From IMG/VR virus record IMGVR_UViG_3300035698_022190, positions 62,001 to 126,000 of that record: 64,000 nt of DNA; one strand, written 5' to 3'. Of the stretch, positions 1 to 43,505 are shown one piece after another (within the stretch, counting starts at the first letter, position 1; each line of letters opens with the position of its first letter). The notes below the pieces were generated by a model, which was given only the letters and a program-made list of their open reading frames with translations, was not told the DNA's origin and did no database searches. The position numbers and the translations under genes are program-made.

Positions 1-1
1 A

Positions 2-2398
2 ACCATGATTAAAAGTGTTGTTTTAAATCAGGGTGACGGAACTTTGTCTGCAACTGGGGGCACTGTTGGTTATATTACTTGTATAGTCCATAATAATGCT
101 TCAACAGCTATTACGCTAGAATTTCAATTTGATGATAGTATTGGAAACCCAGTTACTGTCGCAGAAACAGTTTCAACTGTTGTTGGGGGAACTGACGGAT
201 CTTCGGGATCTTCTGGCTCAAGTGGGTTGGCTGGAGCAGAGGGTGCAGAAGGAGCTGCAGGCGTGGACGCAAGGACAGTATCTTTAACAACAGACAAGCA
301 AGCTTTTGAATATTTAACAAGTAATGTACTAACTGGGACTACTACATGTACATTGACTGCAACTGCATTAAATACTACAGGAACAGTCTACTATCAATTT
401 TATAAAACACCAAAGGGCGGTGCCGCCAGCTCAGTTCAAAATTCAGCAAGCGCTACATATATATATACAGCTAATAGTTGGTACCCTGATATGCCCGAAA
501 CAATGGAAGTACAAATACGCGAGGGTGCGGTTACTGGACCAATATTAGCGCGTGATTCAATGACTATGATGGCCATTAAACCGGGTACAGATGGCGACGA
601 TGGTCTAGATGGTACAACTGTTTTAGTAACTAACGAAGCCCATTCTTTACCGACGACTAGCGCAGGCGCAGTAACTTATACAGGTTCCAGTACTTATATT
701 AAAGTTTGAATAGGAACTACTGCAATCCCAGTTGATCTTGTATCTAGCTATGCTTCCCCATCATTTAGAGTTACTGCAGCAGGTACAGGTATTACAGCGG
801 GAGGAATCTGACAGGATAGCACTTATGTTGTTGGTGTTGGTAATGCAAGTGCGGTAACCACAAACCCAGCCACAGTAAATTTAACTATAACAGTAAAAGA
901 TGCAGCAGGCACAGAAATTGTATATACCAAAATTCAGTCCCTTTCTCAATCTATTGAGGGTGATACGGGCGGAGCAGGAACTGCGGGCGATCCAGGTACT
1001 AGAGGGTCCTTACATTTTGAGGGCAACACTACAGAGATTTTGTGAACAAACGCCGCAGCAGAAGTAGTTATTGCTGATGCTATTGACGATGGTATTATTA
1101 CCGCAAAACAGAATCTAGATTCAGTTACTTTAAAAAATTCTGGTGTTGGGAGTTGAGACGGTTTTTGGGACACTACACAAAGTCCGGACGATTGAACTGT
1201 AGTTGAATACTATATGAATGGAAGTTTACTTGTGCAAGGAACTGTAACTGCCGCAGCACTAAACGCTGATAGTATTTTTTCAAAAGATTATACTCTAGGT
1301 ACTAATGGCTCTATTAAAACCAGCGGACGCGCTTATGGTGCAGCTTCAGCTGGTATATATTTAGGTAATGCTAGTAGTACGAGTAAATTAGATGTAACAA
1401 GTGCGAGTGGTACAAATTACATGCGCTGAGATGGGGCAAAATTTTCAGTTTATGGCGACGGTATGTGAATAATTGATTCATCGTCGGGACTAGTTGATGG
1501 TCCCATGTTAACTAGACATGTAGGAGATAGTCAAGGAGAGATCTTTACAAGCACTTCTACATCTTATGCTAAAAAAATGCAAGGTTCCTGTATATTAAAT
1601 TCTTTAGATACTAAAATTACTTGCGCTTATAGAGGATATAATTTAACTAATGATGCTGAAGGAAGGGTATGATTTAAAGTTTACTCTATTAACAACACCG
1701 TAACAGGATATAATACTGAGGTTGCAGCTGAAAGTGGTTGATTTGGAAACGGGGAAAGCACTACTAGCTGTTTTGTTGGAAATACACCAATTACTTTAGC
1801 TAGCGGAGAACAAGAATATATTAAATTTATAAAACCTGGAGATCTAGTACTTGGAAAGGATAATCAAATTAATGAAGTACAATCTATTCTAACCCCTACC
1901 CTTGGAACACAAACCTTATATAGAATAAATAAAAGTTTTCCTTTTGTAACAGGAGGACACCCATTTTGAACACAAAACGGCTGAAAAGTTATTGATCTAG
2001 ATGCCTATACAGAACTCCCTAATTTAGATGGACCTGTTACGGAATTTGAGCCTGGAGATTTTTTGCAAAGAGCGTCAGGAATCTTGGCACCGCTTAAGTC
2101 TATCGATTCTGTCCAAGAAGATCCAAACACACAATTATTTCATTTAGACGTTACAAATAATAATACTTATATTGCAAATAATTATGTTGTACATAATAAA
2201 GCAACACAATATCCACGTCACGTACCTGGTGTAATTTCATTATCTTTAAGCTCAAATCAAAAAGGCGCTCTTTGTTATTGAGAAGTATGATTAAAGCATG
2301 CTGGAGGAACTGCAGTTATAAGGGACATATCTATTGATGCAGGAAGACAAGGTTTAGACGAACTAGAAGACCACTACTATCCATTTAATGAGCTATAA
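2..2398 (+). CDS. Tail fibre/virion protein with C-terminal Hint domain; TGA read as Trp; probably 5'-truncated by window edge
   Basis: ORF-track pieces 5..709, 1214..1429 and 2063..2281 share one frame interrupted only by 13 TGAs and end at TAA 2396-2398. Gly/Thr/Ser-rich collagen-like stretches. Hint motifs CFVGNT...GHPF(W)TQNG(W)K...YIANNYVVHNK. Confidence 0.88.
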
Positions 2399-2792: not shown

Positions 2793-3554
2793 ATGCCGCG
2801 ATCGCCAATACATATAGAAAGCCTAAAAAACAGATTTAAGAATTTTTCATTTAACAACACTGTAATTTCGGTGTTGTTAGGTGTCATTTTTATTGGCGGT
2901 ATCTATGCTAATTATAAAATAGGGCAGTTACAAACTGATGTAGCACATTTTCAAAATGAAGCTGCGTCCTCTGATACAATACATCAATTAGACTCCACTA
3001 CAATTAGTAAACTGACTTTAGACGTTAGAAATATCACATCAGATAACGGCGAGCTACAAACTTTTATTGACCGTTTACATGGTGAAATAAGAACACAAGC
3101 TGACCTTATAGCTTCTTTAAATGACAGTGTAGCTAATGTTGAGACAGATGCTGACACAATAATTATAGATGGCGACGGACAAGACATCCGTAGATTTAAT
3201 ATAGCTAAGGGGGCTTTTAAGCTTAGAGGCTATTTTCAATTAGATAGTCCATACGAAATAACATTCGACGAAATGGCGGCCAAGATAGCTCTTGAGCTGA
3301 ACATCGTTCAGCTCCGTAATGGCCAGTGGGAAGCCTTCGTCGATACAAAAAACCCAAGTTTGACGGTCACCGATCTCGTAACAAAAGTTAATCCGTACAA
3401 ACCGGCCTGGTGGCAAAAGATTAATCTAAGCGGCGGGGTATATTTGCAAAGCAATCAGCTTGGCTTAATAGGTGGATTCGGGTACAACAAATTCTTAGGA
3501 TTAATTGGCTATGATCCTCGGGGATACATGCTTGGTGTTCAGTATGTCTTTTAA
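2793..3554 (+). CDS. Membrane-anchored coiled-coil protein, possible lysis accessory (spanin-like)
   Basis: N-terminal TM helix, coiled coil, C-terminal beta-strand pattern ending in F; near endolysin. Confidence 0.55.
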   Translation: MPRSPIHIESLKNRFKNFSFNNTVISVLLGVIFIGGIYANYKIGQLQTDVAHFQNEAASSDTIHQLDSTTISKLTLDVRNITSDNGELQTFIDRLHGEIRTQADLIASLNDSVANVETDADTIIIDGDGQDIRRFNIAKGAFKLRGYFQLDSPYEITFDEMAAKIALELNIVQLRNGQWEAFVDTKNPSLTVTDLVTKVNPYKPAWWQKINLSGGVYLQSNQLGLIGGFGYNKFLGLIGYDPRGYMLGVQYVF

Positions 3555-3596: not shown

Positions 3597-3782
3597 GTGA
3601 CTGATATTAGTATACATATAGACGAAGTCGCTGGTACAAAAAACTTTTCTGTCGAGATTAATGACCATAAACAACAAAAATGTTTTTTACTAGATGACTG
3701 TTATAACTCTTATGAAAGATGCTTAGAGGCAGCCATGGATTATATAAAGATAATGAAAATAAATATACAAACAAATGAATAA
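3597..3782 (+). CDS. Small hypothetical protein
   Basis: GTG-start ORF 5 nt after -10 box (leaderless). Confidence 0.5.
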   Translation: MTDISIHIDEVAGTKNFSVEINDHKQQKCFLLDDCYNSYERCLEAAMDYIKIMKINIQTNE

Positions 3783-3785: not shown

Positions 3786-3883
3786 AGGCCCTAGGTGTCA
3801 GATGGGTGACAGTGAGTCTTCAAAACTTTTCCCCCTTGTGTCCAAAGCAAGGTGCGTGGGTTCAATTCCTACAGGGCCTGCCA
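3786..3883 (+). tRNA. Opal suppressor tRNA (anticodon UCA), probably Trp-accepting
   Basis: Acceptor AGGCCCT/AGGGCCT-G-CCA, loop CTTCAAA (TCA at 3820-3822), T-arm GTGGG-TTCAATT-CCTAC, long variable arm. Confidence 0.85.
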
Positions 3884-3900: not shown

Positions 3901-4503
3901 ATGTGGAATTTTATACAAAAGATAATAGATGCTTTACTTCGTAAACCCGTTCAGGTACTTGATCCTGTCGAGACAGCTTTTCAGATAATTAATATTACTG
4001 ATCAACTTCCTTGGCACCCAACACGTAAATGGGCAAAAAGGGGTTTATCACAGATACGAAAAGTGGTAGTGCACCAAGCCTATTGTTCTTATACGCGAAC
4101 AACACTACAAGGCATAAATAAATATCATATTACCCCTGGCCCAAATAATCATTTATCTCCAAACGGTGCTCCGCATATTGCGTATCATTATGGAATTATA
4201 GGTGACGGAACAGTATATCAAACAAATTATCTTAGTAATTCAACCTGGCATTCTGCCGGGCATAACACTGCCAGTATTGGCATATTAGTGTTAGGAGATT
4301 TCCATGGTCCCACGAGAGTAGGTGCAGATAAGCATCCTACCCGTAATCAACTACTTAGTCTAGAGAAACTATTAAATTATTTAGTAGAAGATGCTCAGAT
4401 AAGTATTACAAGCCACGACATTTTTGGTCACGCCAACTTTGGTAAAATAAACTGTCCTGGCACTGCAATAACACGCTTTCTCGATGAATACAGGAGAACC
4501 TAA
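3901..4503 (+). CDS. N-acetylmuramoyl-L-alanine amidase (Amidase_2/PGRP-like endolysin)
   Basis: VVVHQ, IAYHY, WHSAGHN..SIGI, GH....KINCPG motifs. Confidence 0.9.
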   Translation: MWNFIQKIIDALLRKPVQVLDPVETAFQIINITDQLPWHPTRKWAKRGLSQIRKVVVHQAYCSYTRTTLQGINKYHITPGPNNHLSPNGAPHIAYHYGIIGDGTVYQTNYLSNSTWHSAGHNTASIGILVLGDFHGPTRVGADKHPTRNQLLSLEKLLNYLVEDAQISITSHDIFGHANFGKINCPGTAITRFLDEYRRT

Positions 4504-5585
4504 TGAGAAAAATAACAAACATGAGTCTAGATGTTGTAGACCATATAATGAATGATAATCTCGTAAAGTTAGCGGAGCTTGTAGAGCCCTTATCGGATGA
4601 AGCTAAAATTGCTTATGTGCCGTCTTATGAAGAACAGCAAGCAGCAAATGAAAAAGATTTCGCTCTTGTTCTGTGAGACCCTAAAGACGGGACAATCCAT
4701 AAATATGCTCTTTACACATCCGAATTAGCGGAACTCAACCTAGCTTTCTTAGCAGATCAAAAAGACAATTTACCAGAAGAAGTAATTAAAATAGCTGCTG
4801 CAAACTTAACTGCCGCTGCAAAAAATTATGACCTTCCTGTACCTGAAGTCTTAAAAGATTATGCATCAGATAAATATATATACAATGTGCTAGATACACG
4901 TAAAATCAGCGAGGTTGGTTTTATAAATAAAACGGCTGCGGTCGTTGAACATAAAAGTTTTGCTTGGGAAGCGGAAAAGAAATACCCGCTTCATGACAGG
5001 CTAAATATAAAGAAAGCTGCTGCTTTCTTTGAAAAAAACCATTATAAAATGGCTATCGCCAAAAAATCAGAGTTTTGTCAAAATGTTATAGAAGCAGCAG
5101 AGGAACAAAACGTACCACTTGACAAGACAGCAATTCATAAATATGCTAGTTTTGACACTATAATTAATCCTGACTTTGTGGACCACATGAAGGTACGCTT
5201 AAGTTATTTAAAAGATAATAAATCAGAGCAGCCACACAAAGATTCTTACAATGAGCTTATTAAACGTGCAGACACAAAACATCAACAACCTGTTGAAGAG
5301 TTAATGCGCAACGTAGAGGAAGCTGACATTGCTTCTGGCTTATTTAATACCTATGGTAAAGGCGTCGCTGATCCATATGAAACTACACTCTCTGTAATTA
5401 AAGTTGCAGAAAGAACAGTGGACGGGATGACAGTATCTTTAGAGCAACTTCGTAATATTCCAGACGGAGAGCTTACATCTCTGATAGGTAATGGCGGAAT
5501 ATCCGAACTAAAGGCTGAAAATGGTCTTGATGTTTTTGAAGCTTTACCCAGACCGGTAAGACAGGATATTTCAAACTTATTCTAA
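4503..5585 (+). CDS. Hypothetical virion/head protein; one TGA (4674) read as Trp
   Basis: ATG at 4503 overlaps the amidase stop and is in frame with 4887..5585; only TGA interrupts; repeated K-x-A motifs. Confidence 0.75.
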
Positions 5586-33487: not shown

Positions 33488-33541
33488 CTATTTGTTTCCT
33501 TGTTTTATATTGTTTAATACATATAACTCTTTTTATATGTG

Positions 33542-33943
33542 TGGAGCTGCGGGTATCGAAACCCGGTCCGAAATAAAGTCCCATAGAACCTTAATTACAA
33601 GTATTATATCTCGATATAAGGAGCTCGGCGTTCGAGATCAAAACGTTTGTGAGCTAATACTAGTTTCATTTTTGAATTGGGAAATTGTAGCTAAACACCA
33701 ATTATGTCTACATGGTTAGACGTTATAGACCCCGCCAAGCTTTCATGTTTCTCGGTAAGCTTTACGTCACATTAGCTAACCCGCGTAAGCGAAGTTAGAA
33801 TGACCGACTTGCCCTTGAGCAAGTAAGTTCACTGGTATGTTTTTGCCAGTTATTGTTTGTTTTTGAATATGTTTAACGAGAGAAATTCATTTCTCGACTT
33901 GTAGTTTTATCTTCTCTTATCCCGTCGAATCCAATTCAGCCCC
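33542..33943 (-). ncRNA. ssrA: tmRNA
   Basis: 5' GGGGCTGAATTGGATTCGAC, 3' T-arm and GCTCCA, ATAACT-GGC resume site with tag ORF. Confidence 0.93.
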
Positions 33944-33949
33944 ATATTT

Positions 33950-34210
33950 TTATTTATCAAAGGTCCACCAATTATAGTTATATAATATAGTGTTCCTGGC
34001 CTGATCCGCAAATGGAACAGGTTCATGTGTTATACGTTTTGTGGTTACATAGTTTCCACGATATTTTCCTGTGTAGTGAATTTTATGACCAGCTTGTTTT
34101 GCCATCTGCTGTCCTAATTTAATTTCATCATCAGTTAAATACAAATTTTGTTTTATCTGTGAACATCCTACAAATATAAGAATGCTTAGGATTACTGTGA
34201 AAATTTTCAT
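33950..34210 (-). CDS. Putative lipoprotein
   Basis: Signal peptide with FVGC lipobox; GGAG RBS. Confidence 0.65.
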   Translation of the reverse strand: MKIFTVILSILIFVGCSQIKQNLYLTDDEIKLGQQMAKQAGHKIHYTGKYRGNYVTTKRITHEPVPFADQARNTILYNYNWWTFDK

Positions 34211-34253
34211 AACTAGGTCTCCGTTTACAAGATTCTTATACCATAATAGATTA

Positions 34254-35110
34254 GCAAAGGGTACTGTCTATCGCTACCCACCAGTTCAGACCCTATCAGT
34301 CGCACCGCTGAATACGGATACCTTAAGGTGATGGACGAATCGCTCACACGTTTCCCTTTGCCAAAGTTTCTGAGATTAGTAAGGAATTGACGGGTATACC
34401 CGTATAGTCACCTTACGCCGCTTCCGTTTACCTGCACGACTTACGCTATTACTCCTACAGTTTCAAGTGAAGCCAAGTTCTCTTCATTTAATGTCGTGTT
34501 TTGCATTCTACTCTGCCATAACCTCAGATTAAATTTTTAGATCACTGGTCAGCCACCTTCAAAATAAACATTTCAAAGTATCTTAATAGTTCGCTTCCCA
34601 TCGCTATTTAACGACGTCCTTCCTTCAAAGAGGTTTCGCTGCCCGCGGGGTAACCTCACCACATTGCTGTGTAATTTTATCTCGGTCTTGCGCCGGAGCC
34701 TTGTCCGCTGCGTGATCTAATTTTAAACTAAACACCCCTAAGAGCTGGACCGTAACCTGGGTCTTTCAAGGGTTCTCGTTTGGGTGCGGTACTATAACCC
34801 TTTATTCCATCGTTAGTTTAAAAATTTTAAGGGCAGAATGTCCAAGAAATGACCTCACGCTGTTCATGCAACGCTGCTTCATAATCTTTTAGAACAACTA
34901 CCCCAATTTACTGCTACAAAGTTTGGCCCACTTAGATTTTTGACCAGTTGCCTTTCGGTGACCTCTACCCGTTACGATAGATACTGATTCGCTCGACCAT
35001 ATGGGACTCTTCATAGCAGATTTTTTTCATCGGTTGGTTCGTCCTTAGCTCACAATAGTCAGCCAACAAACCGTAGCTTTAAGGGCGTCGGACGATAGAG
35101 TATTAACCTC
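34254..35110 (-). ncRNA. Cluster of unassigned structured RNAs
   Basis: ORF-free; successive blocks closed by terminal stems and separated by AAATTTT linkers; strand inferred from context. Confidence 0.5.
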
Positions 35111-35136
35111 TACACAATGAAAAATTTAAAAATGTT

Positions 35137-35236
35137 AAAACAAGTAGGATTCGAACCTACAACCCTTGGGACTTACTTGACACGCCCAAGACTCTAATGA
35201 GCTTACGTACCTTCCATAGCCATTCACCTTGTTTAA
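35137..35236 (-). ncRNA. Aberrant tRNA-like RNA
   Basis: Canonical T-arm GTAGG-TTCGAAT-CCTAC and AAACAAG acceptor-like stem; no normal anticodon loop. Confidence 0.45.
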
Positions 35237-36144
35237 AAGAGTAACAATATTTCCTCGTCACAGAAATACCGTCCCTTCACTATGCAGAAGTGCTTTACCA
35301 TATTCGGCCATTGTTTTAATTTTGTTAAAAATGTTTTTGAGACAGGTAGTTGGTCTACAAGCGAGGTTTTGCACCTCAAGCATTGCTACTTTCTGACATC
35401 TATCAATCCTTGCGGGATATATAGTCACTGTGCTCAGGCTACCATGCCACTGTCTCAAATGTTTTGTTGTACTCGTGGACAATTTTATGGGACTCTGTCG
35501 TGCACGACTACGATTGATTTCACCCAACCACTTCACCATTCACAGCTAATGCGATAGCTCCCGGTATCGAAGCACAACAAAAACGTTTTTTAAATGTAGG
35601 GACAGCTGACTACGTTACTAGTCAAGCTTCGTCAAGCAGCAAATGTGCGTAAGCCTTGCGAGCCACGAGCGGAATCGAACCGCCCATAACCGTACATTTG
35701 ATATCATTTTGATTATGGTTTTAACGCTACACCAAGCATTCGCTACACCCTCCAGTGCTTCTGTCCCTAATGTTATTGATTGTGGCAGGATTTGAGCCTG
35801 CGACAAGTTTTCTGTCATGTCCTAATCCGAACCCACATCGTGCGGGATCACATTTTAGAATTGGCCCTACTGGAACATTACACTATAGGATAGGGATGTA
35901 TAATGCCCATACGGGTATGCCTTACCAGCATTTCACGATTATTCGTTTCACAACCAATTTAATTCTTTTGAAGCAGCCAGCATTAGAACTATCTTTCCCC
36001 ACGTACGTTCGCTAGTGGTGGTAATACTGATCAAGTATTTAACCGCATGAACGCCTCTGGACTACCAGATATTTATTTAGGGGCCTTTCTTCGCACGTCC
36101 AGAAAGCATCGTAGCTGGCGACTCGTGTGTCATTGCTTCAAATT

Positions 36145-36219
36145 TGGAAGCCCCGAGTGGTGTCGAACCACTGTTGCCAGGATCAAAACCTGGTGTCATG
36201 CCGTTAGACCACGGGGCCA
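36145..36219 (-). tRNA. tRNA-Gln(UUG)
   Basis: Cloverleaf, loop TTTTGAT, CCA. Confidence 0.9.
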
Positions 36220-36477
36220 ATGTAGTAGAATAGTTAACTGCTTTTCATTTTCAGATATTTCAGTATGTACTTGAAAGAAGCTCTCACCTCGTACATAAAG
36301 CGCATTTTAGGGGCCTTACCGGAAGACTGTGTACCATTCCGTTCTTACCCTCATCGGTCTCTTGCCGTAGCGGACTAAACTCTAGCTCAGAAAAGCTTAC
36401 CAGAAGCATTGTCTCTTATTCCCAGTATATTAAATTGGCCTGTTTATATACTGCTTTTGTTAACTATCCTACAAATT

Positions 36478-36588
36478 CTGGGGGCAAAACATTTCAGCCT
36501 TGCGACCTCTAATCCTAGGTGATTGCAAGTTCGCGCGAAACTTTATAGCAATTACCGTGTTAGCACTCTTTATACTGAGCTACCCCAG
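36478..36588 (-). ncRNA. tRNA-like RNA with greatly extended anticodon arm
   Basis: CTGGGG-TAGCTCAG D-arm start, ~45-nt hairpin in place of the anticodon loop, degenerate T-arm. Confidence 0.45.
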
Positions 36589-36591
36589 CTG

Positions 36592-36660
36592 TGGCGGTAG
36601 AGAGTCTTGATCTCTCGAACGAGGGCGTATGAAGCCCTGTTTACTTCCCAGCTTACCGCC
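36592..36660 (-). tRNA. tRNA with CAU anticodon, reduced D-arm
   Basis: AGGGC-TTCATAC-GCCCT; GGCGGTA acceptor. Confidence 0.6.
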
Positions 36661-36665
36661 GAACT

Positions 36666-37022
36666 TTAGAAATTAAAATAAGGTTTTCTAATAGACCCTG
36701 GCAACAGATTTTTAATATTTTCTGCGCCTACAGGATTTAAAGAATGTATAACTATTTCCGCCGAATACCCATCTACACCCTTCTCTTTTAAATGTTTGGC
36801 AAAAGTTGATCCAGTATTTAAATTTAAAGTACTGACCATTACTTTTCCGCCAAGATCATGGTCGAGATAGTATTTATCAAATGGAGCATTCTCATCGTGC
36901 AGTTTTTTCGCTTCTTCTATTTCTTCAGCAAAAAAAAGTTTTGCATCCGGATATTGTGCAGAGAGTTTTGCTACAAAACCTCTAATCCTGTATATGTTGT
37001 CTTCCAATATGAATATTTTCAT
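36666..37022 (-). CDS. Receiver-like (cyclic-phosphate-processing) domain protein
   Basis: IFILED, LDHDLG, IHSLNPVGA. Confidence 0.75.
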   Translation of the reverse strand: MKIFILEDNIYRIRGFVAKLSAQYPDAKLFFAEEIEEAKKLHDENAPFDKYYLDHDLGGKVMVSTLNLNTGSTFAKHLKEKGVDGYSAEIVIHSLNPVGAENIKNLLPGSIRKPYFNF

Positions 37023-37023
37023 G

Positions 37024-37096
37024 AGCCAATGAAGGGCTACGATCCCTTGACTTCCGGTTTACCGAACCGGTACTCTGCCGACTGAGTTACATTGGC
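37024..37096 (-). tRNA. tRNA-Thr(GGU)
   Basis: Cloverleaf, loop TCGGTAA. Confidence 0.85.
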
Positions 37097-37101
37097 AAAT
37101 C

Positions 37102-37396
37102 TGACGAGCGCTCTGCCACTAAGCTACATGACCGGAATAGTCATACCAGGATTCGAACCTGGGCCTCTCCCCGTATGGACGTCTTACCTTAGACCATTAG
37201 CGATTCCGCGTTAGCGCTATGCAAGTTTCGAGCTTGCGTTTTCCTTTTTAAATTTGGAGGTGTCCTAACCAATTAGACGACATGCCCCCGAAGGGACAAG
37301 CCGGGATTCGAACCCGTATTTCCTCGCTTGAAGGTGTCCTAACCACTAGACGACCTGGGTTGCCCCAGGACAGGAGTTGAACCTGTGTTTCCTTCC
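37102..37396 (-). ncRNA. Four tandem circularly permuted tRNA-like (YrlA-module-like) RNAs
   Basis: Order T-arm, loop-capped acceptor stem, D-arm; ends in anticodon stem; UUCG and GCAA caps. Confidence 0.75.
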
Positions 37397-37399
37397 TTG

Positions 37400-37473
37400 A
37401 GCCAGAGACAGGGTTCAAACCTGTATGCCCCAGTTTACGAAACTGGTGCCATTTTCTCTTCAGCCACTCTGGC
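37400..37473 (-). tRNA. tRNA-Thr(CGU)
   Basis: Cloverleaf, loop TTCGTAA. Confidence 0.85.
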
Positions 37474-37594
37474 ATAAATTTTAGTAGAGGGACGGCGCTT
37501 GCCTAGTCCGCCCCTCTTTTTCGTTTACCTTATTTTTAAATAAGAACCAACCTGTAAGGTTTGAATTTACGGTTTTTGTCTTTTTCATAAATTT

Positions 37595-37775
37595 GGTGCA
37601 TGTTTAACCCGACTTTCTTCACACTCTTTTTTTATTCTAATCTCCTTGTTCTGCCACTGAACTATTGGCGCGCAGAATACTTCGTAAAGTACACTGCGCG
37701 CCAACCGGGATTCGAACCCAGGCGTAGGATTTGAAACAACTAAATGTTGCTATAAAGAGTCGATACTTGTCAAAA
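37595..37775 (-). ncRNA. Y-RNA (YrlA)-like RNA
   Basis: T-arm, long capped acceptor-like stem TTGGCGCGCAG/CTGCGCGCCAA, D-arm, distal TCGAC/GTCGG stem. Confidence 0.65.
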
Positions 37776-37905
37776 GTTATGTCCGCGTGTACACTATAGA
37801 GCGATACACTAAAATGTAATAATAATGATAATAGCTTTCGTGTTACTTATGTTTAAGCATTATTTTTATAACACTCCCGCTTTTTATACTGATGCTAGCT
37901 CAAAA

Positions 37906-38661
37906 TTATTTTATAGTATTACCAAATATATGGTTTACTATATTTTGCCCAACCTTGGTGTCTACGACATTAGCTTGGTTTGCTTTAGCGCGTGCTTTCT
38001 TAACCTTAAAAAGTAGATCGTCTGCACGGGCTAATAAATCTGATTTGTCAGCAGGCGTAATTCTGCCGGAAAGATACATTGTGTCCCAGGTACCAACGGC
38101 TTTATCTACAGTTACTACTTGAACTTGTTCTTTGTGTTCTTTAGTAGCTGCAGCCAAACTTAATGGTGTATGCACTTTGTTAAATCGAATTTTCTTTTCT
38201 ACCGGAGTACCCAAGATTGCTCGATCATCTTTATCTAACGGTTGCCATACACGTGTTGGATCTAGTGTTGGAATCGTTTTTAAAACACTGCGAAACTGAG
38301 TTAATTGATTTTCTAGCGACAAAAAGCTTGTTGCTGAAAGTGTCATTTCAATTCCGTCTATAGTAATTGGAGCTGTTGCGTTTCCTGAAGAGTTAGTTTG
38401 CTCTTTGGAAATTAAAGCGTCGACAGCAGGTACAAAAGATTTTACAGTATACTTTAATTTTTCTGCTACTGTAGTTACTACTTCTTTTCGTTCGTCCTGT
38501 AAATCTCCAGCTTCAACATCAATAGCTGTATAATCTTTTTTCAGACCATCAAAATGCGAGTCTTTTTTCTGAAAAGTATGGATTGTTTCATTAATTATAT
38601 TTTGGCTTTGGGTACTTAGTGGACCTGTAACTGCCAAAATCTGATGTAGTTGATTTGCCAT
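37906..38661 (-). CDS. Conserved hypothetical protein upstream of Y-like RNA
   Basis: LHQILAV, IPTLDP, VKKARAKAN; AGGA RBS. Confidence 0.8.
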   Translation of the reverse strand: MANQLHQILAVTGPLSTQSQNIINETIHTFQKKDSHFDGLKKDYTAIDVEAGDLQDERKEVVTTVAEKLKYTVKSFVPAVDALISKEQTNSSGNATAPITIDGIEMTLSATSFLSLENQLTQFRSVLKTIPTLDPTRVWQPLDKDDRAILGTPVEKKIRFNKVHTPLSLAAATKEHKEQVQVVTVDKAVGTWDTMYLSGRITPADKSDLLARADDLLFKVKKARAKANQANVVDTKVGQNIVNHIFGNTIK

Positions 38662-38782
38662 GTGTTTCCTTTTGTTTTTATGTTTATATTAATATGGTCG
38701 CAGCGGGAGGTATTACCTCCTCCAAACATCTACATGAGATATTTAGCCAACGGCGCCTTTTTGTTGCTGTCTGCGTGTTAAA

Positions 38783-38859
38783 TGGTTGCGGGAGCAGGAA
38801 TTAAACCTACCTATCGGAGCTTATGAGGCTCCTGCTGCATCAGCTCTGTCTTTCCCGCG
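38783..38859 (-). tRNA. tRNA-fMet(CAU)
   Basis: C1:A72 mismatch, loop CTCATAA, CCA. Confidence 0.8.
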
Positions 38860-38861
38860 AG

Positions 38862-38934
38862 TGCACCTGGAGGGCTACGATCCCCCTACTCTCCGGTTAA
38901 AAGCCGGAAGCTCTACCAATTGAGCTACAGGTGC
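38862..38934 (-). tRNA. tRNA-Lys(UUU)
   Basis: Loop CTTTTAA. Confidence 0.9.
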
Positions 38935-38943
38935 AATTTTAAC

Positions 38944-39282
38944 TTATTTCTTGACTGTTGTTTTCGCTACTGTTTTCTTTAACTTTGTAGCAGAATCCAT
39001 CGCCAATAATTCTTTTACGTTTGATTCAACTTTTGATATATGGTCTGCTTGCGCATTTAATATCTTTTGCGCATCTTTTTCGTGACCAATAGCATCTTGC
39101 AATTCTTTAATACGAAGATTGCTTTTGCTTAATGATGACATAATATCTGCGCCAATTGTGTTAAGTTGATCTAGAAGCTTATTAAAAGCTGCTAATGCTT
39201 TGTTTGTTCTGGACTGAATACTTCCAGAAATTTTCTCGGTTGGTTTACTAACCCGAGTGATATTGATTCCGAATAACGTCAT
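38944..39282 (-). CDS. Coiled-coil hypothetical protein
   Basis: AAGGA RBS, heptads. Confidence 0.7.
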   Translation of the reverse strand: MTLFGINITRVSKPTEKISGSIQSRTNKALAAFNKLLDQLNTIGADIMSSLSKSNLRIKELQDAIGHEKDAQKILNAQADHISKVESNVKELLAMDSATKLKKTVAKTTVKK

Positions 39283-39337
39283 GAATCGTTCCTTTTTTTG
39301 TTTCGTGTTTTATTGTACAATAAGTCCGAAGACTCTG

Positions 39338-39410
39338 AGCCAGAGACAGGATTTAAACCTGCATAGTTCTCCTTACAGGGGAGCTGCCTTGTCGATCGAG
39401 CCACTCTGGC
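39338..39410 (-). tRNA. tRNA-Thr(UGU)
   Basis: Loop CCTGTAA. Confidence 0.8.
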
Positions 39411-39416
39411 ATAATA

Positions 39417-40145
39417 TTAATATCGAGCCCAATGTCCGAAATAGTTTTCGTTTAGGCCCTCTAATATTTCTTTTTTAACTTGTCGTTTTTCAGCCGCTTT
39501 TTCATTAGACTGTTCTACATCTTTCCATGGATCAGTATAGCAGTAATTATCCACTATTCGGAGACCGCGTCCCTGGTGCCATAACTTATCATCCAATCTC
39601 TCCATTTCTGAATCTACATCACCCTGTGGTAACCGTTGGTGTGTATAATAGTCATGTTCAATTTTAAAACTGAACATCCACCTGTACTTAAATTTATAAG
39701 CATACACAGTAACATTATCCCATGGGCGTTTTTCTAATTCAACTTTTTTAAAGTATCTCTGGAAGCGTTCTGGGACTTTATTCCACTTTTCCTTTGATAA
39801 AAGTTCCGGCTCTTGTTTTATTTCTTCTTGAAGCCATTCCCATCCACCGACGCCATGTCTACGTCTTAAGTCTGATTTTTTGGGAAACTTCTTTGTTCTG
39901 CACCACCATTGGTTTTGCAGAAAAGTATCCAATAGATATTGTATATCTTTTGCTTTTTTAGAGCGGCTAATATCATTCCTTAAAACAAAATATCTTATAT
40001 AACCGTTTGGAACAGGTTTATCTAATTCAACCCAAACTTCCTTTTCCTTACGTTGGTCCCAAAGTTCTTGATATCGATTGTAATCTCTGATATACTCTTT
40101 TTCTTTTTCTGTGTAATACTGTTTGCGATTTTCACGCTTACTCAT
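39417..40145 (-). CDS. Hypothetical basic/aromatic protein
   Basis: AGGA RBS, 242-aa ORF. Confidence 0.75.
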   Translation of the reverse strand: MSKRENRKQYYTEKEKEYIRDYNRYQELWDQRKEKEVWVELDKPVPNGYIRYFVLRNDISRSKKAKDIQYLLDTFLQNQWWCRTKKFPKKSDLRRRHGVGGWEWLQEEIKQEPELLSKEKWNKVPERFQRYFKKVELEKRPWDNVTVYAYKFKYRWMFSFKIEHDYYTHQRLPQGDVDSEMERLDDKLWHQGRGLRIVDNYCYTDPWKDVEQSNEKAAEKRQVKKEILEGLNENYFGHWARY

Positions 40146-40186
40146 ATATTATTCCTGTGGTTAGATTTTAATAAGTAATCATAATG

Positions 40187-40257
40187 CAGGCACGCGAGGA
40201 CTTGAACCCCGATCAAAAGATTTGGAATCTTCGATGCTACCATTACACCACGCGCCT
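40187..40257 (-). tRNA. tRNA-Trp(CCA)
   Basis: Loop TTCCAAA, AGG acceptor start, G73. Confidence 0.9.
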
Positions 40258-40260
40258 AAT

Positions 40261-40336
40261 TGGAGTGCCCGACAGGAATTAAACCTGCAAAAACCGGGGT
40301 TGCAATCCGGCGCTATAATCATTCAGCCACGAGCAC
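40261..40336 (-). tRNA. tRNA-Cys(GCA)
   Basis: Loop TTGCAAC, U73, CCA. Confidence 0.88.
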
Positions 40337-40340
40337 ATTG

Positions 40341-40411
40341 TGCAGTAGAAGGGTATCGATCCCTCGTCTCAACGTTGGCAACGTCATATTCTACCATTGA
40401 ACCACTACTGC
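40341..40411 (-). tRNA. tRNA-Gly(GCC)
   Basis: Loop TTGCCAA. Confidence 0.88.
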
Positions 40412-40416
40412 GTTTT

Positions 40417-40971
40417 TTATTTTGTGCGACGATTAGCAACTCTACTAGCAACCCAACCTTCTGGCTTAATAAGCCCTTCAAAGCCGTGTGCTTTTATAGT
40501 TCCTAATACTCCCGCTACAACTGAATTTGATAAGTATTTTTTATCTCTGTTTAGATCTGCATGTAGAGTATCTATTTCATGCACACCTAAACCTACCTTA
40601 GCTAATTCAGGGTTTAACCACATCGCTACTTTAATACTATCATATGCTTCTTCAATTAAGCGTGTGCGATTATCTAATCTTTTGCCGCCTATGTGTTGTT
40701 TTTTATATATTTTATAATAAACACGTCCGCCAGCCCCTACTCGCCATAAAGCTACAGCGGTTACAAACCGTGTACTATATTTATGTACTTGACTATCAGA
40801 ACCAACAATAATTCGTATTTCGCGACCTTCTGCAGTTGCCGAAATATCCTTAAACATTTCTTCAGGCAAGTTCTCAACAACTGTATTGTGTAGATCCATA
40901 CGCTTCCATACCCACCCTGGGGAATCCTGCGTCATTTTAGCTACATAATTGTTCTCTAGTTGATTTGTCAT
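40417..40971 (-). CDS. RNase H-like YkuK/DUF458 protein
   Basis: IIVGSDSQ, RLIEEA, HADLN, IKPEGWVASRVA. Confidence 0.8.
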   Translation of the reverse strand: MTNQLENNYVAKMTQDSPGWVWKRMDLHNTVVENLPEEMFKDISATAEGREIRIIVGSDSQVHKYSTRFVTAVALWRVGAGGRVYYKIYKKQHIGGKRLDNRTRLIEEAYDSIKVAMWLNPELAKVGLGVHEIDTLHADLNRDKKYLSNSVVAGVLGTIKAHGFEGLIKPEGWVASRVANRRTK

Positions 40972-40989
40972 CTTTATCTCCGTTTACAG

Positions 40990-41061
40990 AGCCCTATATC
41001 GGATTCAAACCGATGAGACCAGCTTGGAAGGCTGGTATGTTTTCAGCTACATCAATAGGGC
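40990..41061 (-). tRNA. tRNA-Gly(UCC)
   Basis: Loop CTTCCAA. Confidence 0.88.
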
Positions 41062-41062
41062 A

Positions 41063-41137
41063 TGGTAGGGACAGCAGGTTATGATCCGACGTTTCGGGTT
41101 TATCAGACCCGTGTTCTACCAATTGAACTATGTCCCC
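41063..41137 (-). tRNA. tRNA-Ile(GAU)
   Basis: Loop CTGATAA, CCA. Confidence 0.85.
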
Positions 41138-41141
41138 AATG

Positions 41142-41221
41142 CGGAGAGTAGAAGAATCGAACTCCAATGTTGCCACCCCAACAGTTTTCAAGACTGCTTG
41201 TGCCCATGCACGGTACTCTCC
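41142..41221 (-). tRNA. tRNA-Ser(UGA)
   Basis: Loop CTTGAAA, long variable arm, G73. Confidence 0.85.
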
Positions 41222-41275
41222 AGTGTGCAAAGCGAGGCATAAATGAATATGCCGCGCTCCGAACTTGAAACAGTG

Positions 41276-41485
41276 CTAAATAACTATTACGTTATTAGCA
41301 GCTTCACCTTTTTCAGTTTGTACGACGTCAAATTCAACTTTTTCGTTTTCTTTCAATGATTTAAAACCATCTGCGATAATTGAATTGTGGTGTACAAAGA
41401 GGTCATTGCCTTCATCACGAGTGATAAAGCCAAAACCTTTACTGTCGTTGAACCATTTTACTGTTCCAACTTCTTTTTTTGCCAT
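41276..41485 (-). CDS. Cold-shock protein (CspA family)
   Basis: [20 protein letters not shown]; start at MAKK. Confidence 0.93.
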
Positions 41486-41547
41486 CTTTGTTTTTCCTAC
41501 TTGTTTATTGTTAACTACCTGGTAAACTTTCGTAGTTTCCAGGGTTG

Positions 41548-41629
41548 CGGAAGATATAGGGATCAAACCTATGGAGGTGTTACCCTCACGGGTTAGCAAC
41601 CCGCTGCATTATCACTCTGCCAATCTTCC
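41548..41629 (-). tRNA. tRNA-Ser(GCU)
   Basis: Loop TTGCTAA, long variable arm. Confidence 0.88.
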
Positions 41630-41635
41630 AATTGT

Positions 41636-41866
41636 TTACTTAAAATCGTCTTTTTCGTAAATCATAAAACTTTTCACATCTTCTAGCCAATCCTCTTCTT
41701 CATTATCCATTAAAAATAAAATGGCTGCTACAATTAGGCCAACCCACCCTAGTAATAATATTAGAAGTGCTATAATAGTATCTAAACCCGATACCCCATC
41801 GTTTTCTTTTAATTGTATAGAAAGATATATTCCTGCGGCTACTAAGCCTGCTATGAGTCCAAACAT
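41636..41866 (-). CDS. Small membrane protein
   Basis: Two hydrophobic helices. Confidence 0.7.
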   Translation of the reverse strand: MFGLIAGLVAAGIYLSIQLKENDGVSGLDTIIALLILLLGWVGLIVAAILFLMDNEEEDWLEDVKSFMIYEKDDFK

Positions 41867-41868
41867 AT

Positions 41869-42426
41869 TTATTTTCCTGTTTGTTTTTTGTCTAGGTATT
41901 CAAATACTTCATCATAATTCTTAACGCGGGTTCCTGAGTAATTTTTATCCATATTAGAGGGTCTAGTAAATAAAAGATCTTGACTCGGATCGCAGTTCTC
42001 AAATTTATCATCTATCAGTATTCCCGGTACTATGTGTTTATCTAAACCATGGGAATAAATTAAATAGTCATATTTAATACCGTGTTTATTTAGCCATTGT
42101 ACAGTATACATAAATGTCTTTGCATTTTGGTGTGTGTTTACAACTACTGTATAGCCTTGTTTTCTTAATTTTTTCATAAATGCTTTTGCTCCTCTAAAGG
42201 GCTCAGCATTAATTAAAAATACTTCTTTTGCTTTTATATCGAATAAAAAATTTAATAGTTCTTTCTTCGGTATTTCTGGGTAATGTTCTTCCATTCCCCA
42301 CTCTGATGTTGGGTTCATTTCTTCGGGAGTTTTATCGGGATAAAATTCTCTCAAAGTAATATGTGCAGATTTTAAAAAATATCTTAATACCCCATCAATG
42401 TCTACATTAATTGTTTTTGTATTTAT
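41869..42426 (-). CDS. HAD 5'(3')-deoxyribonucleotidase; start uncertain
   Basis: Frame extends upstream to INVDIDGVL (DxDGV); ILIDDKFEN. Confidence 0.8.
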   Translation of the reverse strand: MNTKTINVDIDGVLRYFLKSAHITLREFYPDKTPEEMNPTSEWGMEEHYPEIPKKELLNFLFDIKAKEVFLINAEPFRGAKAFMKKLRKQGYTVVVNTHQNAKTFMYTVQWLNKHGIKYDYLIYSHGLDKHIVPGILIDDKFENCDPSQDLLFTRPSNMDKNYSGTRVKNYDEVFEYLDKKQTGK

Positions 42427-42977: not shown

Positions 42978-42994
42978 GTTATTCCTTTTTAAAT

Positions 42995-43071
42995 TGGGGT
43001 GACCGACGGAACTTGAATCCGCATCTACCTGGGCCACATCCAGGTGCTTTACCAATTAAGCTACGGCCAAC
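42995..43071 (-). tRNA. tRNA-His(GUG)
   Basis: Loop ATGTGGC, G-1/C73, CCA. Confidence 0.88.
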
Positions 43072-43072
43072 G

Positions 43073-43158: not shown

Positions 43159-43164
43159 AATTTA

Positions 43165-43501: not shown

Positions 43502-43505
43502 ATTG

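What the first reader, a model, noticed from the sequence alone, without database searches (positions are those of the whole stretch)
3786..3883. Structurally unusual opal suppressor tRNA placed in the late block
Seen: 98 nt with Trp-type identity (A1-U72, G2-C71, G3-C70, G73), but a 5-bp D-stem TGTCA/TGACA, a 4-bp anticodon stem with a U:U top pair, and a long variable arm (CCTTG..CAAGG). It is the only + strand tRNA, far from the 30-tRNA cluster that has a normal tRNA-Trp(CCA), and lies behind its own sigma70-type promoter. Inference: a separately timed code-switch tRNA with a Trp/Sec-like hybrid shape, possibly needing a dedicated synthetase.
Basis: partly seen in the sequence, partly recalled or inferred. 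Interest (0 to 1): 0.72.

Follow-up and report, generated by a model that had tools for sequence, protein, structure and literature searches.

The report
Phage opal-suppressor tRNA-Trp with decoy anticodon arm
This is a real phage tRNA that reads the stop codon UGA as tryptophan in the phage's late genes, and it carries an extra hairpin that copies the normal tryptophan anticodon loop, a design not found described in the literature searched.

Summary
The 98-nt element at window 3786-3883 (+) is real. It is the only UCA-anticodon tRNA in a 210-kb salt-lake jumbo phage.

**What it is**
- Not tRNA-Sec. The acceptor/T stems are 7/5 bp, Rfam tRNA-Sec scores 32.5 bits against a threshold of 47, and the genome has no SelA.
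- In-frame TGA codons align with Trp or TGA in four relatives, almost never with Ser, Cys or Gly.
- TGA makes up 34% of Trp codons in + strand (structural and lysis) genes. It is nearly absent from − strand replication genes.
- This fits the known phage late-gene code switch (TGA to Trp, code 4).

**Context**
- The tRNA ends 17 nt before the endolysin start codon, and this synteny holds in relatives.
- No sigma70-type promoter lies upstream.
- The phage encodes no TrpRS, SerRS-class enzyme or release factor.

**What appears new**
- The long variable arm is a covarying 5-6 bp stem closing a 7-nt loop N-U-C-C-A-A-A/C, which matches the anticodon loop of tRNA-Trp(CCA).
- In an unbiased scan, 37 of 42 unique long-arm UCA tRNAs from 56 viral contigs show this loop (chance about 3.6).
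- None of 45 carriers encodes TrpRS. Three of 8 class I tRNA(UCA) carriers (one lineage) do.

**Inference**
The arm may keep the CCA identity element for host TrpRS. This is untested.

The parts
3786..3883 (+). Opal-suppressor tRNA(UCA), 98 nt, Trp-type body with a long extra arm and an encoded CCA end
   Evidence: ARAGORN. Covariance model R1 scores 76.2 bits. Rfam tRNA-Sec scores only 32.5 bits against a threshold of 47. Covariation in 30 homologues.
3786..3792 (+). Acceptor stem 5' strand, pairing with 3873-3879 (7 bp; A1-U72, G2-C71, G3-C70)
   Evidence: Sequence. 99.5% of cells are paired and 6 of 7 pairs show double changes. The 1:72 pair is only ever A-U (26) or G.U (4).
3796..3811 (+). 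D-arm: 5-bp stem TGTCA/TGACA with the 6-nt loop GATGGG
   Evidence: Sequence. Compensatory CGTCA/TGACG in L049 and L080.
3813..3829 (+). Anticodon arm. Loop CUUCAAA, anticodon UCA at 3820-3822, top pair U:U mismatch (effectively a 4-bp stem)
   Evidence: In the family the top pair is G.U in 16 of 30 and unpaired in 4 of 30.
3834..3852 (+). Extra (variable) arm: 6-bp stem closing the 7-nt loop GUCCAAA (3840-3846; CCA at 3842-3844). It copies a tRNA-Trp(CCA) anticodon stem-loop
   Evidence: MFE fold. All 5 modelled pairs covary. UCCA lies in the loop in 37 of 42 unique homologues from an unbiased scan, against 3.6 by chance. The phage's own tRNA-Trp(CCA) loop is UUCCAAA.
3856..3872 (+). T-arm (GTGGG / TTCAATT / CCTAC)
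   Evidence: 100% of cells paired.
3880..3883 (+). Discriminator G73 and encoded CCA end
   Evidence: G73 is invariant in 30 homologues.
1..2398 (+). 3' part of a 2588-aa late ORF (genome 56632-64398) with 32 in-frame TGAs; GDSL lipase and Hint domains
2793..3554 (+). 253-aa protein with one N-terminal transmembrane segment and a weak Rz-like spanin match; a lysis-cassette candidate
   Evidence: PHROG 739, E = 1.5e-4. Hydropathy scan.
3597..3782 (+). 61-aa ORF of unknown function whose stop codon lies 3 nt before the tRNA
3901..4503 (+). Amidase_2 endolysin starting 17 nt after the tRNA. It has no in-frame TGA here, but 1-5 TGAs at Trp positions in relatives
   Evidence: Pfam PF01510, E = 3.7e-16. 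PHROG amidase/endolysin. Synteny and TGA counts.
4503..5585 (+). 360-aa ORF open only if the TGA at 4674-4676 is read. That codon is TGA in L015 and TGG (Trp) in L011 and L016
40186..40257 (-). The phage's ordinary class I tRNA-Trp(CCA), anticodon loop UUCCAAA
   Evidence: It is the best-scoring class I tRNA of the window against model R1 (46.2 bits).
33541..45601 (-). Cluster of about 27 tRNAs plus a tmRNA on the early (standard-code) strand

Best explanation
The element is a phage-encoded opal-suppressor tRNA of tryptophan identity.

**Proposed sequence of events**
- Early in infection the phage expresses its - strand genes: replication enzymes, a phage sigma factor, about 27 ordinary tRNAs and a tmRNA. 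These genes avoid in-frame TGA, so they can be read in the host's standard code.
- When + strand (late) transcription starts, the tRNA(UCA) is made as part of the late transcript. It lies between a lysis-cassette ORF and the endolysin gene, and is presumably released by RNase P and 3' processing (inferred).
- It is charged with tryptophan by the host TrpRS (inferred). The phage encodes no synthetase. The tRNA carries G73, A1-U72, G2-C71, G3-C70, C35 and A36.
- It then decodes the 155 internal in-frame TGA codons of + strand genes (baseplate, tail, portal-like and lysis-module genes) as Trp. Virion and lysis proteins can therefore only be completed once the tRNA has accumulated.

**Sub-hypothesis for the extra arm (inferred, about 40-45% likely)**
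- The extra arm is a duplicate of the Trp anticodon stem-loop: a 5-6 bp stem and a 7-nt loop N-U-C-C-A-A-A.
- It would preserve the C34-C35-A36 identity signal for TrpRS, which the real anticodon lost through C34-to-U.
- Decoding (UCA, read by the ribosome) and identity (CCA, read by the synthetase) would then sit on two separate arms.
For: **TGA is sense, and means Trp**
- Abutting long + strand ORFs are open only if TGA is read through.
- Opposite this genome's TGAs, relatives have TGA 37, W 23, L 5, Y 4, S 1, C 0 and G 0. Opposite the relatives' TGAs, this genome has W 49, TGA 37, L 4, F 3 and Y 3.
- Independent carriers give the same profile: W 52, TGA 24, F 21, Y 14, S 10.
- TGG is depleted in + strand genes (9.7 against 15.7 per 1000 codons). 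TGG plus TGA restores it to 14.8.

**Strand and time split**
- The + strand has 4.5 internal TGA per 1000 codons, the - strand 0.9. The 10-40 kb - strand block has none.
- The - strand genes include an AEP primase, a helicase, a family A DNA polymerase, a class II RNR and a sigma factor.
- The + strand genes include Baseplate_J, a portal-like protein and an endolysin.

**The tRNA**
- It is the only UCA tRNA in the genome.
- The tRNA-to-endolysin gap is a conserved 16-22 nt in five relatives, and the relatives' endolysins contain 1-5 TGAs.
- The fold covaries.
- Carriers of this tRNA type are enriched for TGA recoding: ORF-coverage gain of 0.18 for TGA-as-sense against 0.05 for the TAG-as-sense control.
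- The genome has no TrpRS, SerRS-class enzyme, release factor or SelA.

**The extra arm**
- UCCA lies in the hairpin loop in 37 of 42 unique sequences from a scan that did not require it. Chance gives 3.6, with a maximum of 10 in 1000 shuffles.
- The motif is retained even in G001, whose T-loop has degenerated.
- None of 45 long-arm carriers encodes TrpRS: the 40, G001-G004 and this genome. Eleven of them are at least 90% complete.
- Three of 8 class I tRNA(UCA) carriers encode a bona fide trpS.

**Literature**
- Bacterial Trp identity rests on G73, the CCA anticodon, A1-U72 and G2-C71/G3-C70 (PMC9976931).
- Phage tRNA(UCA) species insert Trp in E. coli extract (PMC12636597).
- The late-gene and lysis recoding model is from bioRxiv 10.1101/2021.08.26.457843.
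Against: - There is no expression, processing or charging data. No RNA run was listed.
- The complex prediction was not folded, so it says nothing.
- A long variable arm plus G73 is the SerRS signature, so some serylation cannot be excluded.
- The endolysin of this particular genome has no TGA, so lysis gating here is weaker than in relatives.
- The TrpRS anticorrelation rests on one TrpRS-bearing lineage (the three enzymes are 79-100% identical), and many records are fragments.
- Opal suppressors derived from ordinary tRNA-Trp are already tryptophanylated without any extra arm (stated in the Borges preprint). The arm may therefore not be needed for identity.
- Whether an arm leaving the tRNA core at positions 45/46 can reach the TrpRS anticodon-binding domain is unknown.
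Confidence: 0.85

Rival explanations
1. The tRNA is a Trp opal suppressor, but the CCA-loop arm serves something other than TrpRS recognition. Possibilities are a binding site for a phage or host factor (a modification enzyme or processing nuclease), a decoy against a host anticodon nuclease or tRNA-targeting defence, a blocker of mischarging, or a way to tune competition with RF2.
For: - The motif is strongly conserved, which shows selection but not its target.
- Ordinary tRNA-Trp-derived UCA suppressors are already charged with Trp, as discussed in bioRxiv 10.1101/2021.08.26.457843 and PMC12636597.
- The arm is joined by 3-5 unpaired nucleotides on each side, unlike the arms of tRNA-Ser.
Against: - The loop matches the full Trp anticodon loop (U33-like U, CCA, A37-like and A38-like A), not just a short motif.
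- The stem and loop have the same size as an anticodon arm.
- Carriers lack their own TrpRS, whereas a class I lineage has one.
- No candidate partner protein was identified.
Confidence: 0.35
2. The tRNA is a class II, serine-accepting suppressor charged by host SerRS through its long arm and G73, so that UGA is read as Ser.
For: It has a long variable arm and G73. SerRS ignores the anticodon (PMC7609411).
Against: - Ser is almost never found opposite TGA: 1 of 83 and 0 of 107 in the window's clade, and 10 of 150 in other carriers.
- The Trp-codon deficit of late genes is filled exactly by TGA.
- Thirteen of 30 family members have C2-G71, listed as an antideterminant against E. coli SerRS (PMC9976931).
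- The extra arm has long single-stranded linkers and a 7-nt loop, unlike the phage's own tRNA-Ser arms.
Confidence: 0.06
3. It is a genuine selenocysteine tRNA (selC), as ARAGORN labels it.
For: ARAGORN label 'SeC', UCA anticodon, long arm, G73, and a sub-threshold Rfam tRNA-Sec match.
Against: - The acceptor/T stems are 7/5 bp rather than 8/5, and the D-arm is 5 bp with a 6-nt loop rather than 6 bp with 4 nt.
- Rfam scores 32.5 bits against a threshold of 47.
- The genome has no SelA.
- There are 155 internal TGAs, up to 32 in one gene, aligning with Trp and never with Cys.
Confidence: 0.02
4. The tRNA gene is a non-functional relic, and TGA is read by another route, such as near-cognate reading by tRNA-Trp(CCA) or a host suppressor.
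For: - There is no expression data.
- The window copy has a mismatch at the top of its anticodon stem, and G001's copy has an aberrant T-loop.
- tRNA-Trp(CCA) species with 4-bp anticodon stems can read UGA (PMC13092985).
Against: - Compensatory changes occur in every helix across 30 homologues.
- Synteny is conserved.
- The anticodon loop and G73 are invariant.
- The tRNA co-occurs with TGA recoding.
- Thirty-two TGAs in one gene demand efficient decoding.
Confidence: 0.03

Closest known systems
Suppressor tRNA(UCA) of TGA-recoded (code 4) phages, such as Jade and Agate phages (Borges et al., bioRxiv 10.1101/2021.08.26.457843) and the AP1/HF2 tRNA-Trp(UCA) pairs (Seki et al., PMC12636597)
   Same: - It is phage-encoded and reads UGA as Trp.
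- Recoding is concentrated in structural and lysis genes.
- The tRNA sits directly at the lysis cassette.
- Early genes are in standard code, and the genome has low GC.
   Different: - There is no TrpRS or RF1 'code change module' here.
- The tRNA has a long extra arm that copies the Trp anticodon loop. Neither paper mentions this ('variable' searches).
- The source is a salt-lake or marine phage, not a gut phage.
Cellular tRNA-Trp(UCA) of code-4 bacteria (Mycoplasma, Spiroplasma) and E. coli opal suppressors derived from tRNA-Trp
   Same: UCA anticodon on a Trp-identity body (A1-U72, G73), charged by TrpRS despite U34.
   Different: Those are class I tRNAs with a 4-5 nt variable loop. This one has a 19-nt hairpin inserted in the variable region.
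Bacterial tRNA-Sec, allo-tRNAs and selC* tRNA-Cys (Mukai et al., PMC5389517; PMC7609411)
   Same: UCA anticodon, G73 and a long variable arm. ARAGORN files it as SeC.
   Different: - The stems are 7/5 bp rather than 8/5, 8/4 or 9/3.
- The extra-arm loop is 7 nt with UCCA, and the linkers are long.
- The meaning of UGA is Trp, not Sec, Ser or Cys.
tRNA-Trp(CCA) with a 4-bp anticodon stem that reads UGA (Blastocrithidia, Condylostoma and some bacteria; PMC13092985)
   Same: The window tRNA also has an unpaired top anticodon-stem pair (U:U). Most family members have a weak G.U at that position.
   Different: Here the anticodon itself is fully cognate (UCA). Any effect of the weak top pair is unknown.
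Anticodon-arm mimics read by synthetases outside tRNA, such as the thrS mRNA operator bound by ThrRS (reviewed in PMC9976931)
   Same: A hairpin with an anticodon-like loop is presented to a synthetase that recognises anticodons.
   Different: The mimic here would lie inside a functional tRNA and serve aminoacylation rather than translational repression. This remains hypothetical.

Membership tests
Bacterial selenocysteine tRNA (selC, Rfam RF01852) | 13-bp acceptor/T domain (8 + 5 bp) | tested here: not met
   The acceptor stem is 7 bp and the T stem 5 bp. Position 8 (A) faces C and does not pair. The 7-bp register covaries in 30 homologues.
Bacterial selenocysteine tRNA (selC, Rfam RF01852) | Score at or above the Rfam gathering threshold | tested here: not met
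   32.5 bits against a threshold of 47, with many non-canonical pairs in the alignment. Not listed at gathering threshold.
Bacterial selenocysteine tRNA (selC, Rfam RF01852) | Sec machinery, and UGA at rare Cys-equivalent sites | tested here: not met
   No SelA in the genome. There are 155 internal TGAs aligning with Trp and never with Cys. SelB and SECIS elements were not searched.
Bacterial tRNA-Trp identity set | Discriminator G73 | tested here: met
   G at 3880, invariant in 30 homologues.
Bacterial tRNA-Trp identity set | A1-U72 with G2-C71 and G3-C70 | tested here: met
   Present in the window tRNA. In the family, 1:72 is A-U in 26 and G.U in 4, and U72 is invariant. 2:71 is G-C in 17 and C-G in 13.
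Bacterial tRNA-Trp identity set | Anticodon C34-C35-A36 | tested here: inconclusive
   The decoding anticodon is U34-C35-A36, so two of three match. A full U-C-C-A-A-A loop is present in the extra arm. Whether TrpRS reads it is unknown.
Bacterial tRNA-Trp identity set | Class I shape (4-5 nt variable loop) | tested here: not met
   The variable region is 26 nt and contains a 6-bp hairpin.
Bacterial tRNA-Trp identity set | Aminoacylation with Trp by TrpRS | not testable with these tools
   Only indirect evidence: TGA aligns with Trp. The complex prediction was not run.
Phage late-gene stop-codon recoding, code 4 (Borges et al.) | In-frame TGA in structural and lysis genes that aligns with Trp in homologues | tested here: met
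Phage late-gene stop-codon recoding, code 4 (Borges et al.) | Early and replication genes compatible with the standard code | tested here: met
   The - strand has 0.9 TGA per 1000 codons and none across 10-40 kb. These are replication genes and a sigma factor.
Phage late-gene stop-codon recoding, code 4 (Borges et al.) | Phage-encoded suppressor tRNA, often next to the lysis cassette | tested here: met
   The tRNA ends 17 nt upstream of the Amidase_2 endolysin, and this is conserved in relatives.
Phage late-gene stop-codon recoding, code 4 (Borges et al.) | Optional TrpRS + RF1 code-change module (Jade type) | tested here: not met
   No PF00579 or PF00472 match in the complete genome.
tRNA-Ser / allo-tRNA type class II suppressors | UGA positions equivalent to Ser; 8/4 or 9/3 stems for allo-tRNA | tested here: not met
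   Ser is opposite TGA in 1 of 83 and 0 of 107 sites. The stems are 7/5.

The most novel reading that the evidence does not exclude
This would be a natural 'two-anticodon-arm' tRNA. The ribosome reads the true anticodon UCA, while host TrpRS is recruited by a duplicated anticodon arm that still carries CCA. Identity and decoding would then be physically uncoupled. That would let phages reassign UGA to Trp in a standard-code host without encoding a synthetase.
Probability: 0.4. Interest if true: 0.9.

Novelty: new variant of a known kind. Interest (0 to 1): 0.78.

Why it matters
- **Detection of code-4 phage suppressors.** Phage TGA-to-Trp recoding is known. How the suppressor tRNA is charged in a standard-code host is not, and Borges et al. 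found suppressors in only 35% of code-4 phages. This family explains part of that gap. ARAGORN files it as 'SeC' or misses it, and Rfam's tRNA model does not report it.
- **A testable answer to the charging problem.** The tRNA keeps a spare copy of the Trp anticodon arm. If TrpRS reads that arm, this would be an example of an identity element moved to a variable arm, and a design principle for orthogonal or efficient UGA suppressors.
- **Value without the mechanism.** Even if the mechanism is wrong, the result is a conserved, covarying family with a model (R1) and a simple signature. It occurs in at least 56 viral contigs from diverse environments.

Tried and rejected
- **DNA similarity to GenBank phages:** no match in near or distant mode.
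- **PHROG search of seven large late ORFs:** nothing.
- **Exact 26-nt T-arm/acceptor search in viral contigs:** no hit.
- **The search for related loci with the baseplate N-terminus:** no relatives. Relatives were reached instead through the Volactin-like gene and record handles.
- **First codon comparison over all frames:** misleading, because shadow frames of conserved DNA gave many Cys and Asp. It was redone on the longest non-overlapping frames.
- **Complex prediction of the B. subtilis TrpRS dimer with the tRNA:** the job was counted but not folded, so it is no evidence either way.
- **Sequencing runs:** only DNA runs from salt-lake and marine metagenomes. No RNA run was listed, so expression and processing could not be examined, and read laying was not used.
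- **Supplementary tables of Seki et al.:** not held, so I could not tell whether long-arm tRNAs were among their 31 tested tRNA(UCA).
- **Converse TrpRS test:**
  - The search for related loci recovered only the same three contigs.
  - tblastn against GenBank phages gave mostly host-contaminated records.
  - The TrpRS anticorrelation therefore rests on one lineage.
- **Rejected readings:** tRNA-Sec, a Ser suppressor, and a promoter of its own (see rivals and observation check).

Full report
**Observation**

ARAGORN calls a 98-nt tRNA with anticodon UCA at exactly window 3786-3883 (+) and labels it 'SeC'.
- A1-U72, G2-C71, G3-C70, G73 and an encoded CCA end.
- A 5-bp D-stem TGTCA/TGACA with a 6-nt loop.
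- An anticodon stem whose top pair is a U:U mismatch.
- A long extra arm.

The minimum-free-energy fold reproduces five helices. Its energy is not unusual against shuffles (z = -0.72), as is common for tRNAs. Rfam does not report the element at gathering thresholds. The tRNA-Sec model reaches only 32.5 bits against a threshold of 47, with many mismatched pairs. It is the only + strand tRNA of the window. About 27 tRNAs and a tmRNA lie on the - strand at 33.5-45.6 kb, including a normal tRNA-Trp(CCA) at 40186-40257.

The claimed sigma70-type promoter is not supported. The consensus scan finds no site within about 600 nt upstream, and the region has fewer matches than shuffles. The tRNA begins 3 nt after the stop codon of a 61-aa ORF and ends 17 nt before the ATG of the next gene.

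**Genome and code**

The window is bases 62001-126000 of a single 210,208-bp contig with 36.7% GC. The record is classed as a virus and CheckV estimates it complete. Near-identical DNA occurs in salt-lake and marine metagenomes.

Reading TGA as sense merges many fragments into long, abutting + strand ORFs. At genome 37.4-64.4 kb these are 1023, 1143, 383, 725, 1018, 481, 684 and 2588 aa long, and the last has 32 TGAs. A similar run lies at 177-209 kb. One of them is a Baseplate_J protein.

I reached four relatives' records through the neighbouring Volactin-like gene, including a 99%-complete 210,263-bp genome. I then compared codons in the longest non-overlapping frames:
- Opposite this genome's TGAs the relatives have TGA 37, Trp 23, Leu 5, Tyr 4, Ser 1, Cys 0 and Gly 0.
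- Opposite the relatives' TGAs this genome has Trp 49, TGA 37, Leu 4, Phe 3 and Tyr 3.
- This is the substitution profile of Trp itself.

Two independent results agree. Late-strand genes have only 9.7 TGG per 1000 codons against 15.7 on the other strand, and adding TGA restores the figure to 14.8. TGA supplies 34% of Trp codons in + strand genes here, and 42-64% in relatives.

So the genome itself shows TGA = Trp (table 4) for these genes. Ser, Sec/Cys and Gly are excluded as the meaning.

**Division of labour between the strands**

| | Internal in-frame TGAs | Codons | Per 1000 codons | Genes with an internal TGA |
|---|---|---|---|---|
| + strand | 155 | 34,698 | 4.5 | 53 of 110 |
| - strand | 24 | 25,960 | 0.9 | 12 of 134 |

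The 10-40 kb - strand block has none.

The TGA-free - strand genes are an AEP primase, a helicase, a family A DNA polymerase, a class II ribonucleotide reductase and a sigma factor with regions 2 and 4. The + strand carries baseplate, portal-like and lysis genes. This matches the published model in which early genes use the host's standard code while late and lysis genes need a phage suppressor (bioRxiv 10.1101/2021.08.26.457843). The phage sigma factor gives a plausible reason why no host-type promoter precedes the tRNA.

**Local context**

The genes around the tRNA are:
- Upstream, a 253-aa protein with one N-terminal transmembrane segment and a weak Rz-like spanin match.
- Upstream, a 61-aa ORF.
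- Directly downstream, an Amidase_2 endolysin.
- Next, a 360-aa ORF that needs the TGA at 4674-4676. That codon is TGG in two relatives.

The tRNA-to-endolysin gap of 16-22 nt is conserved in L010, L015, L016 and L011. In those relatives the endolysin contains 2, 5, 1 and 1 in-frame TGAs at positions that are Trp here. This genome's endolysin has none. The lysis-gating logic is therefore clearer in the relatives than in this genome.

**The tRNA family**

Syntenic homologues differ by compensatory changes in every helix. A signature search found 41 viral contigs. Because that pattern demanded TCCAAA, I repeated it without that requirement. This gave 58 hits, of which 2 are not tRNAs. The same signature with a class I spacing gave only 8.

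An alignment of 30 distinct members supports five helices:
- 92.8% of cells are paired, against 67.3% in column shuffles and 37-46% in slid registers.
- Twenty of 26 pairs have changes on both sides.
- All five extra-arm pairs covary. For example, one pair is CG 8, GC 7, AU 5, UA 3.
- U72 and G73 are invariant, and pair 1:72 is only ever A-U (26) or G.U (4).
- The acceptor stem is 7 bp, so the fold is 7/5. It is not the 8/5 of tRNA-Sec or the 8/4 and 9/3 of allo-tRNAs (PMC5389517).

Most members have an obvious tRNA-Trp body. The covariance model built from the alignment scores the phage's own tRNA-Trp(CCA) best among the window's class I tRNAs. It also recovers the homologue that ARAGORN missed in the complete relative (L030:16160-16258). 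That copy has a degenerate T-loop but keeps A1-U72, G73, UCA and the extra arm.

**The extra arm**

In the window it is a 6-bp stem (3834-3839 / 3847-3852) closing the 7-nt loop GUCCAAA. Across the unbiased set there are 42 unique variable regions from 56 loci:
- 37 place U-C-C-A inside the predicted hairpin loop.
- Shuffled regions contain the tetramer 3.6 times on average, with a maximum of 10.
- The loop consensus is N-U-C-C-A-A-(A/C) on a 4-8 bp stem of free sequence.
- The commonest loops are CUCCAAA and GUCCAAA.

This is the anticodon loop of bacterial-type tRNA-Trp(CCA). The phage's own tRNA-Trp has UUCCAAA. The phage's tRNA-Ser and tRNA-Leu arms look different. The arm has the size of an anticodon arm and is joined to the core by 3-5 unpaired nucleotides on each side.

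The few long-arm UCA tRNAs that lack the motif (L093, L095, L097, L104) sit in loci with no sign of TGA recoding. Carriers of the motif gain 0.18 in long-ORF coverage when TGA is read as sense, against 0.05 for the TAG control. Their TGAs again align with Trp and aromatic residues.

The signature is nearly absent from 185,579 prokaryotic species genomes. It occurs in only 6 MAG contigs of scattered taxonomy.

**Who charges it**

This genome encodes no class Ib synthetase (TrpRS/TyrRS), no class IIa synthetase (SerRS class), no release factor and no SelA. Charging must therefore be done by a host enzyme, and the codon evidence says the product is Trp-tRNA.

Published identity rules for bacterial TrpRS are G73, the CCA anticodon, A1-U72 and G2-C71/G3-C70 (PMC9976931). 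The body has all of them except C34, which had to become U to read UGA. The extra arm supplies a complete CCA loop.

| Carriers | Total with TrpRS | Records at least 90% complete with TrpRS |
|---|---|---|
| Long-arm tRNA(UCA) | 0 of 45 | 0 of 11 |
| Class I tRNA(UCA) | 3 of 8 | 2 of 2 |

The three class I enzymes are bona fide trpS, scoring 304-318 bits against a cutoff of 177. In contig G048 the trpS lies about 2.6 kb from the tRNA.

This fits two alternative solutions: bring your own TrpRS, or keep a CCA arm for the host's. However, the three TrpRS genes are 79-100% identical and so form one lineage. The test is therefore weak. I found no description of such a tRNA in the library searched. 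Seki et al. report that all 13 phage tRNA(UCA) they analysed insert Trp in E. coli extract, but they do not discuss variable arms.

**Verdict**

- **Observation:** largely confirmed. The promoter claim is not.
- **Interpretation:** right that this is a late-gene code-switch tRNA of Trp identity.
- **Corrections:** wrong, or unsupported, that it is Sec-like in any functional sense or needs a dedicated synthetase.
- **Known versus new:** the system belongs to the known kind of phage code-4 recoding. The tRNA architecture is a new variant, a Trp suppressor carrying a conserved copy of the Trp anticodon arm.
- **Mechanism:** the identity-decoy role of the arm is an inference that biochemical tests can settle quickly.

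Noticed in passing
window 33541-33943 (-): A phage-encoded tmRNA (Rfam 108.5 bits) with an unusually long predicted tag, GKNIPVNLLAQGQVGHSNFAYAG. Relatives G001 and G004 also carry tmRNAs, with different tags (GKTQFALAA and AKLGRALLIEPVY).
   Followed up: no
window 5939-6925 (+) and 6926-7537 (+): A strong Volactin-family actin homologue (Pfam PF25216, E = 2e-70) is followed directly by a protein with a mitochondrial-carrier repeat (PF00153, E = 3e-10). Both are unusual in a bacteriophage. The actin gene is conserved in 14 viral contigs.
   Followed up: partly
genome 56632-64398 (window -5368 to 2398), + strand; L004:1632-9395: A 2588-aa ORF with 32 in-frame TGAs carries a GDSL lipase/acylhydrolase domain near the N-terminus and weak Hint (intein-like) matches near residue 2380.
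   Followed up: no
L001:10611-11423 (-) = genome 10611-11423: A phage sigma factor (Sigma70 regions 2 and 4) lies in the TGA-free early block. It is a candidate driver of + strand late transcription, including the suppressor tRNA.
   Followed up: no
G001 115365-115439 (-) (in L032): The complete relative G001 carries a tRNA with anticodon CUA (ARAGORN labels it 'Pyl') in its tRNA cluster, in addition to the UCA suppressor. This is a possible amber suppressor in a TGA-recoded phage. TAG usage was not examined.
   Followed up: no
L030:16160-16258 (+) and L011:3470-3568 (+): The suppressor tRNA of G001 and L011 has a non-canonical T-loop (GGCGGUA in place of UUCGAAU). ARAGORN therefore misses it. 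It still keeps the UCCAA extra-arm loop.
   Followed up: partly
window 45444-45514 (-), 44667-44736 (-), 43826-43913 (-), 38783-38859 (-): Further tRNA-like elements lie in the - strand cluster that ARAGORN did not call. Two are found by Rfam above threshold and two only by model R1 at lower scores. Their anticodons were not examined.
   Followed up: no
L093:9791-9884, L095, L097:1866-1962, L104:5111-5204: These long-arm UCA tRNAs lack the CCA motif in the extra arm and begin with G1. They lie in viral contigs that show no TGA recoding. Their amino-acid identity and role are open.
   Followed up: no
L119:192-1415 and L121:2336-3814: In the phages that pair a class I tRNA(UCA) with their own TrpRS, the trpS gene sits next to a Lon protease homologue (TIGR00763, up to 706 bits).
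   Followed up: no
L002:10144-12876 (-) = genome 30144-32876: A 909-aa early protein has an AEP primase domain of the 'TOTE conflict system' type (PF22548, E = 4e-31) together with DUF927.
   Followed up: no
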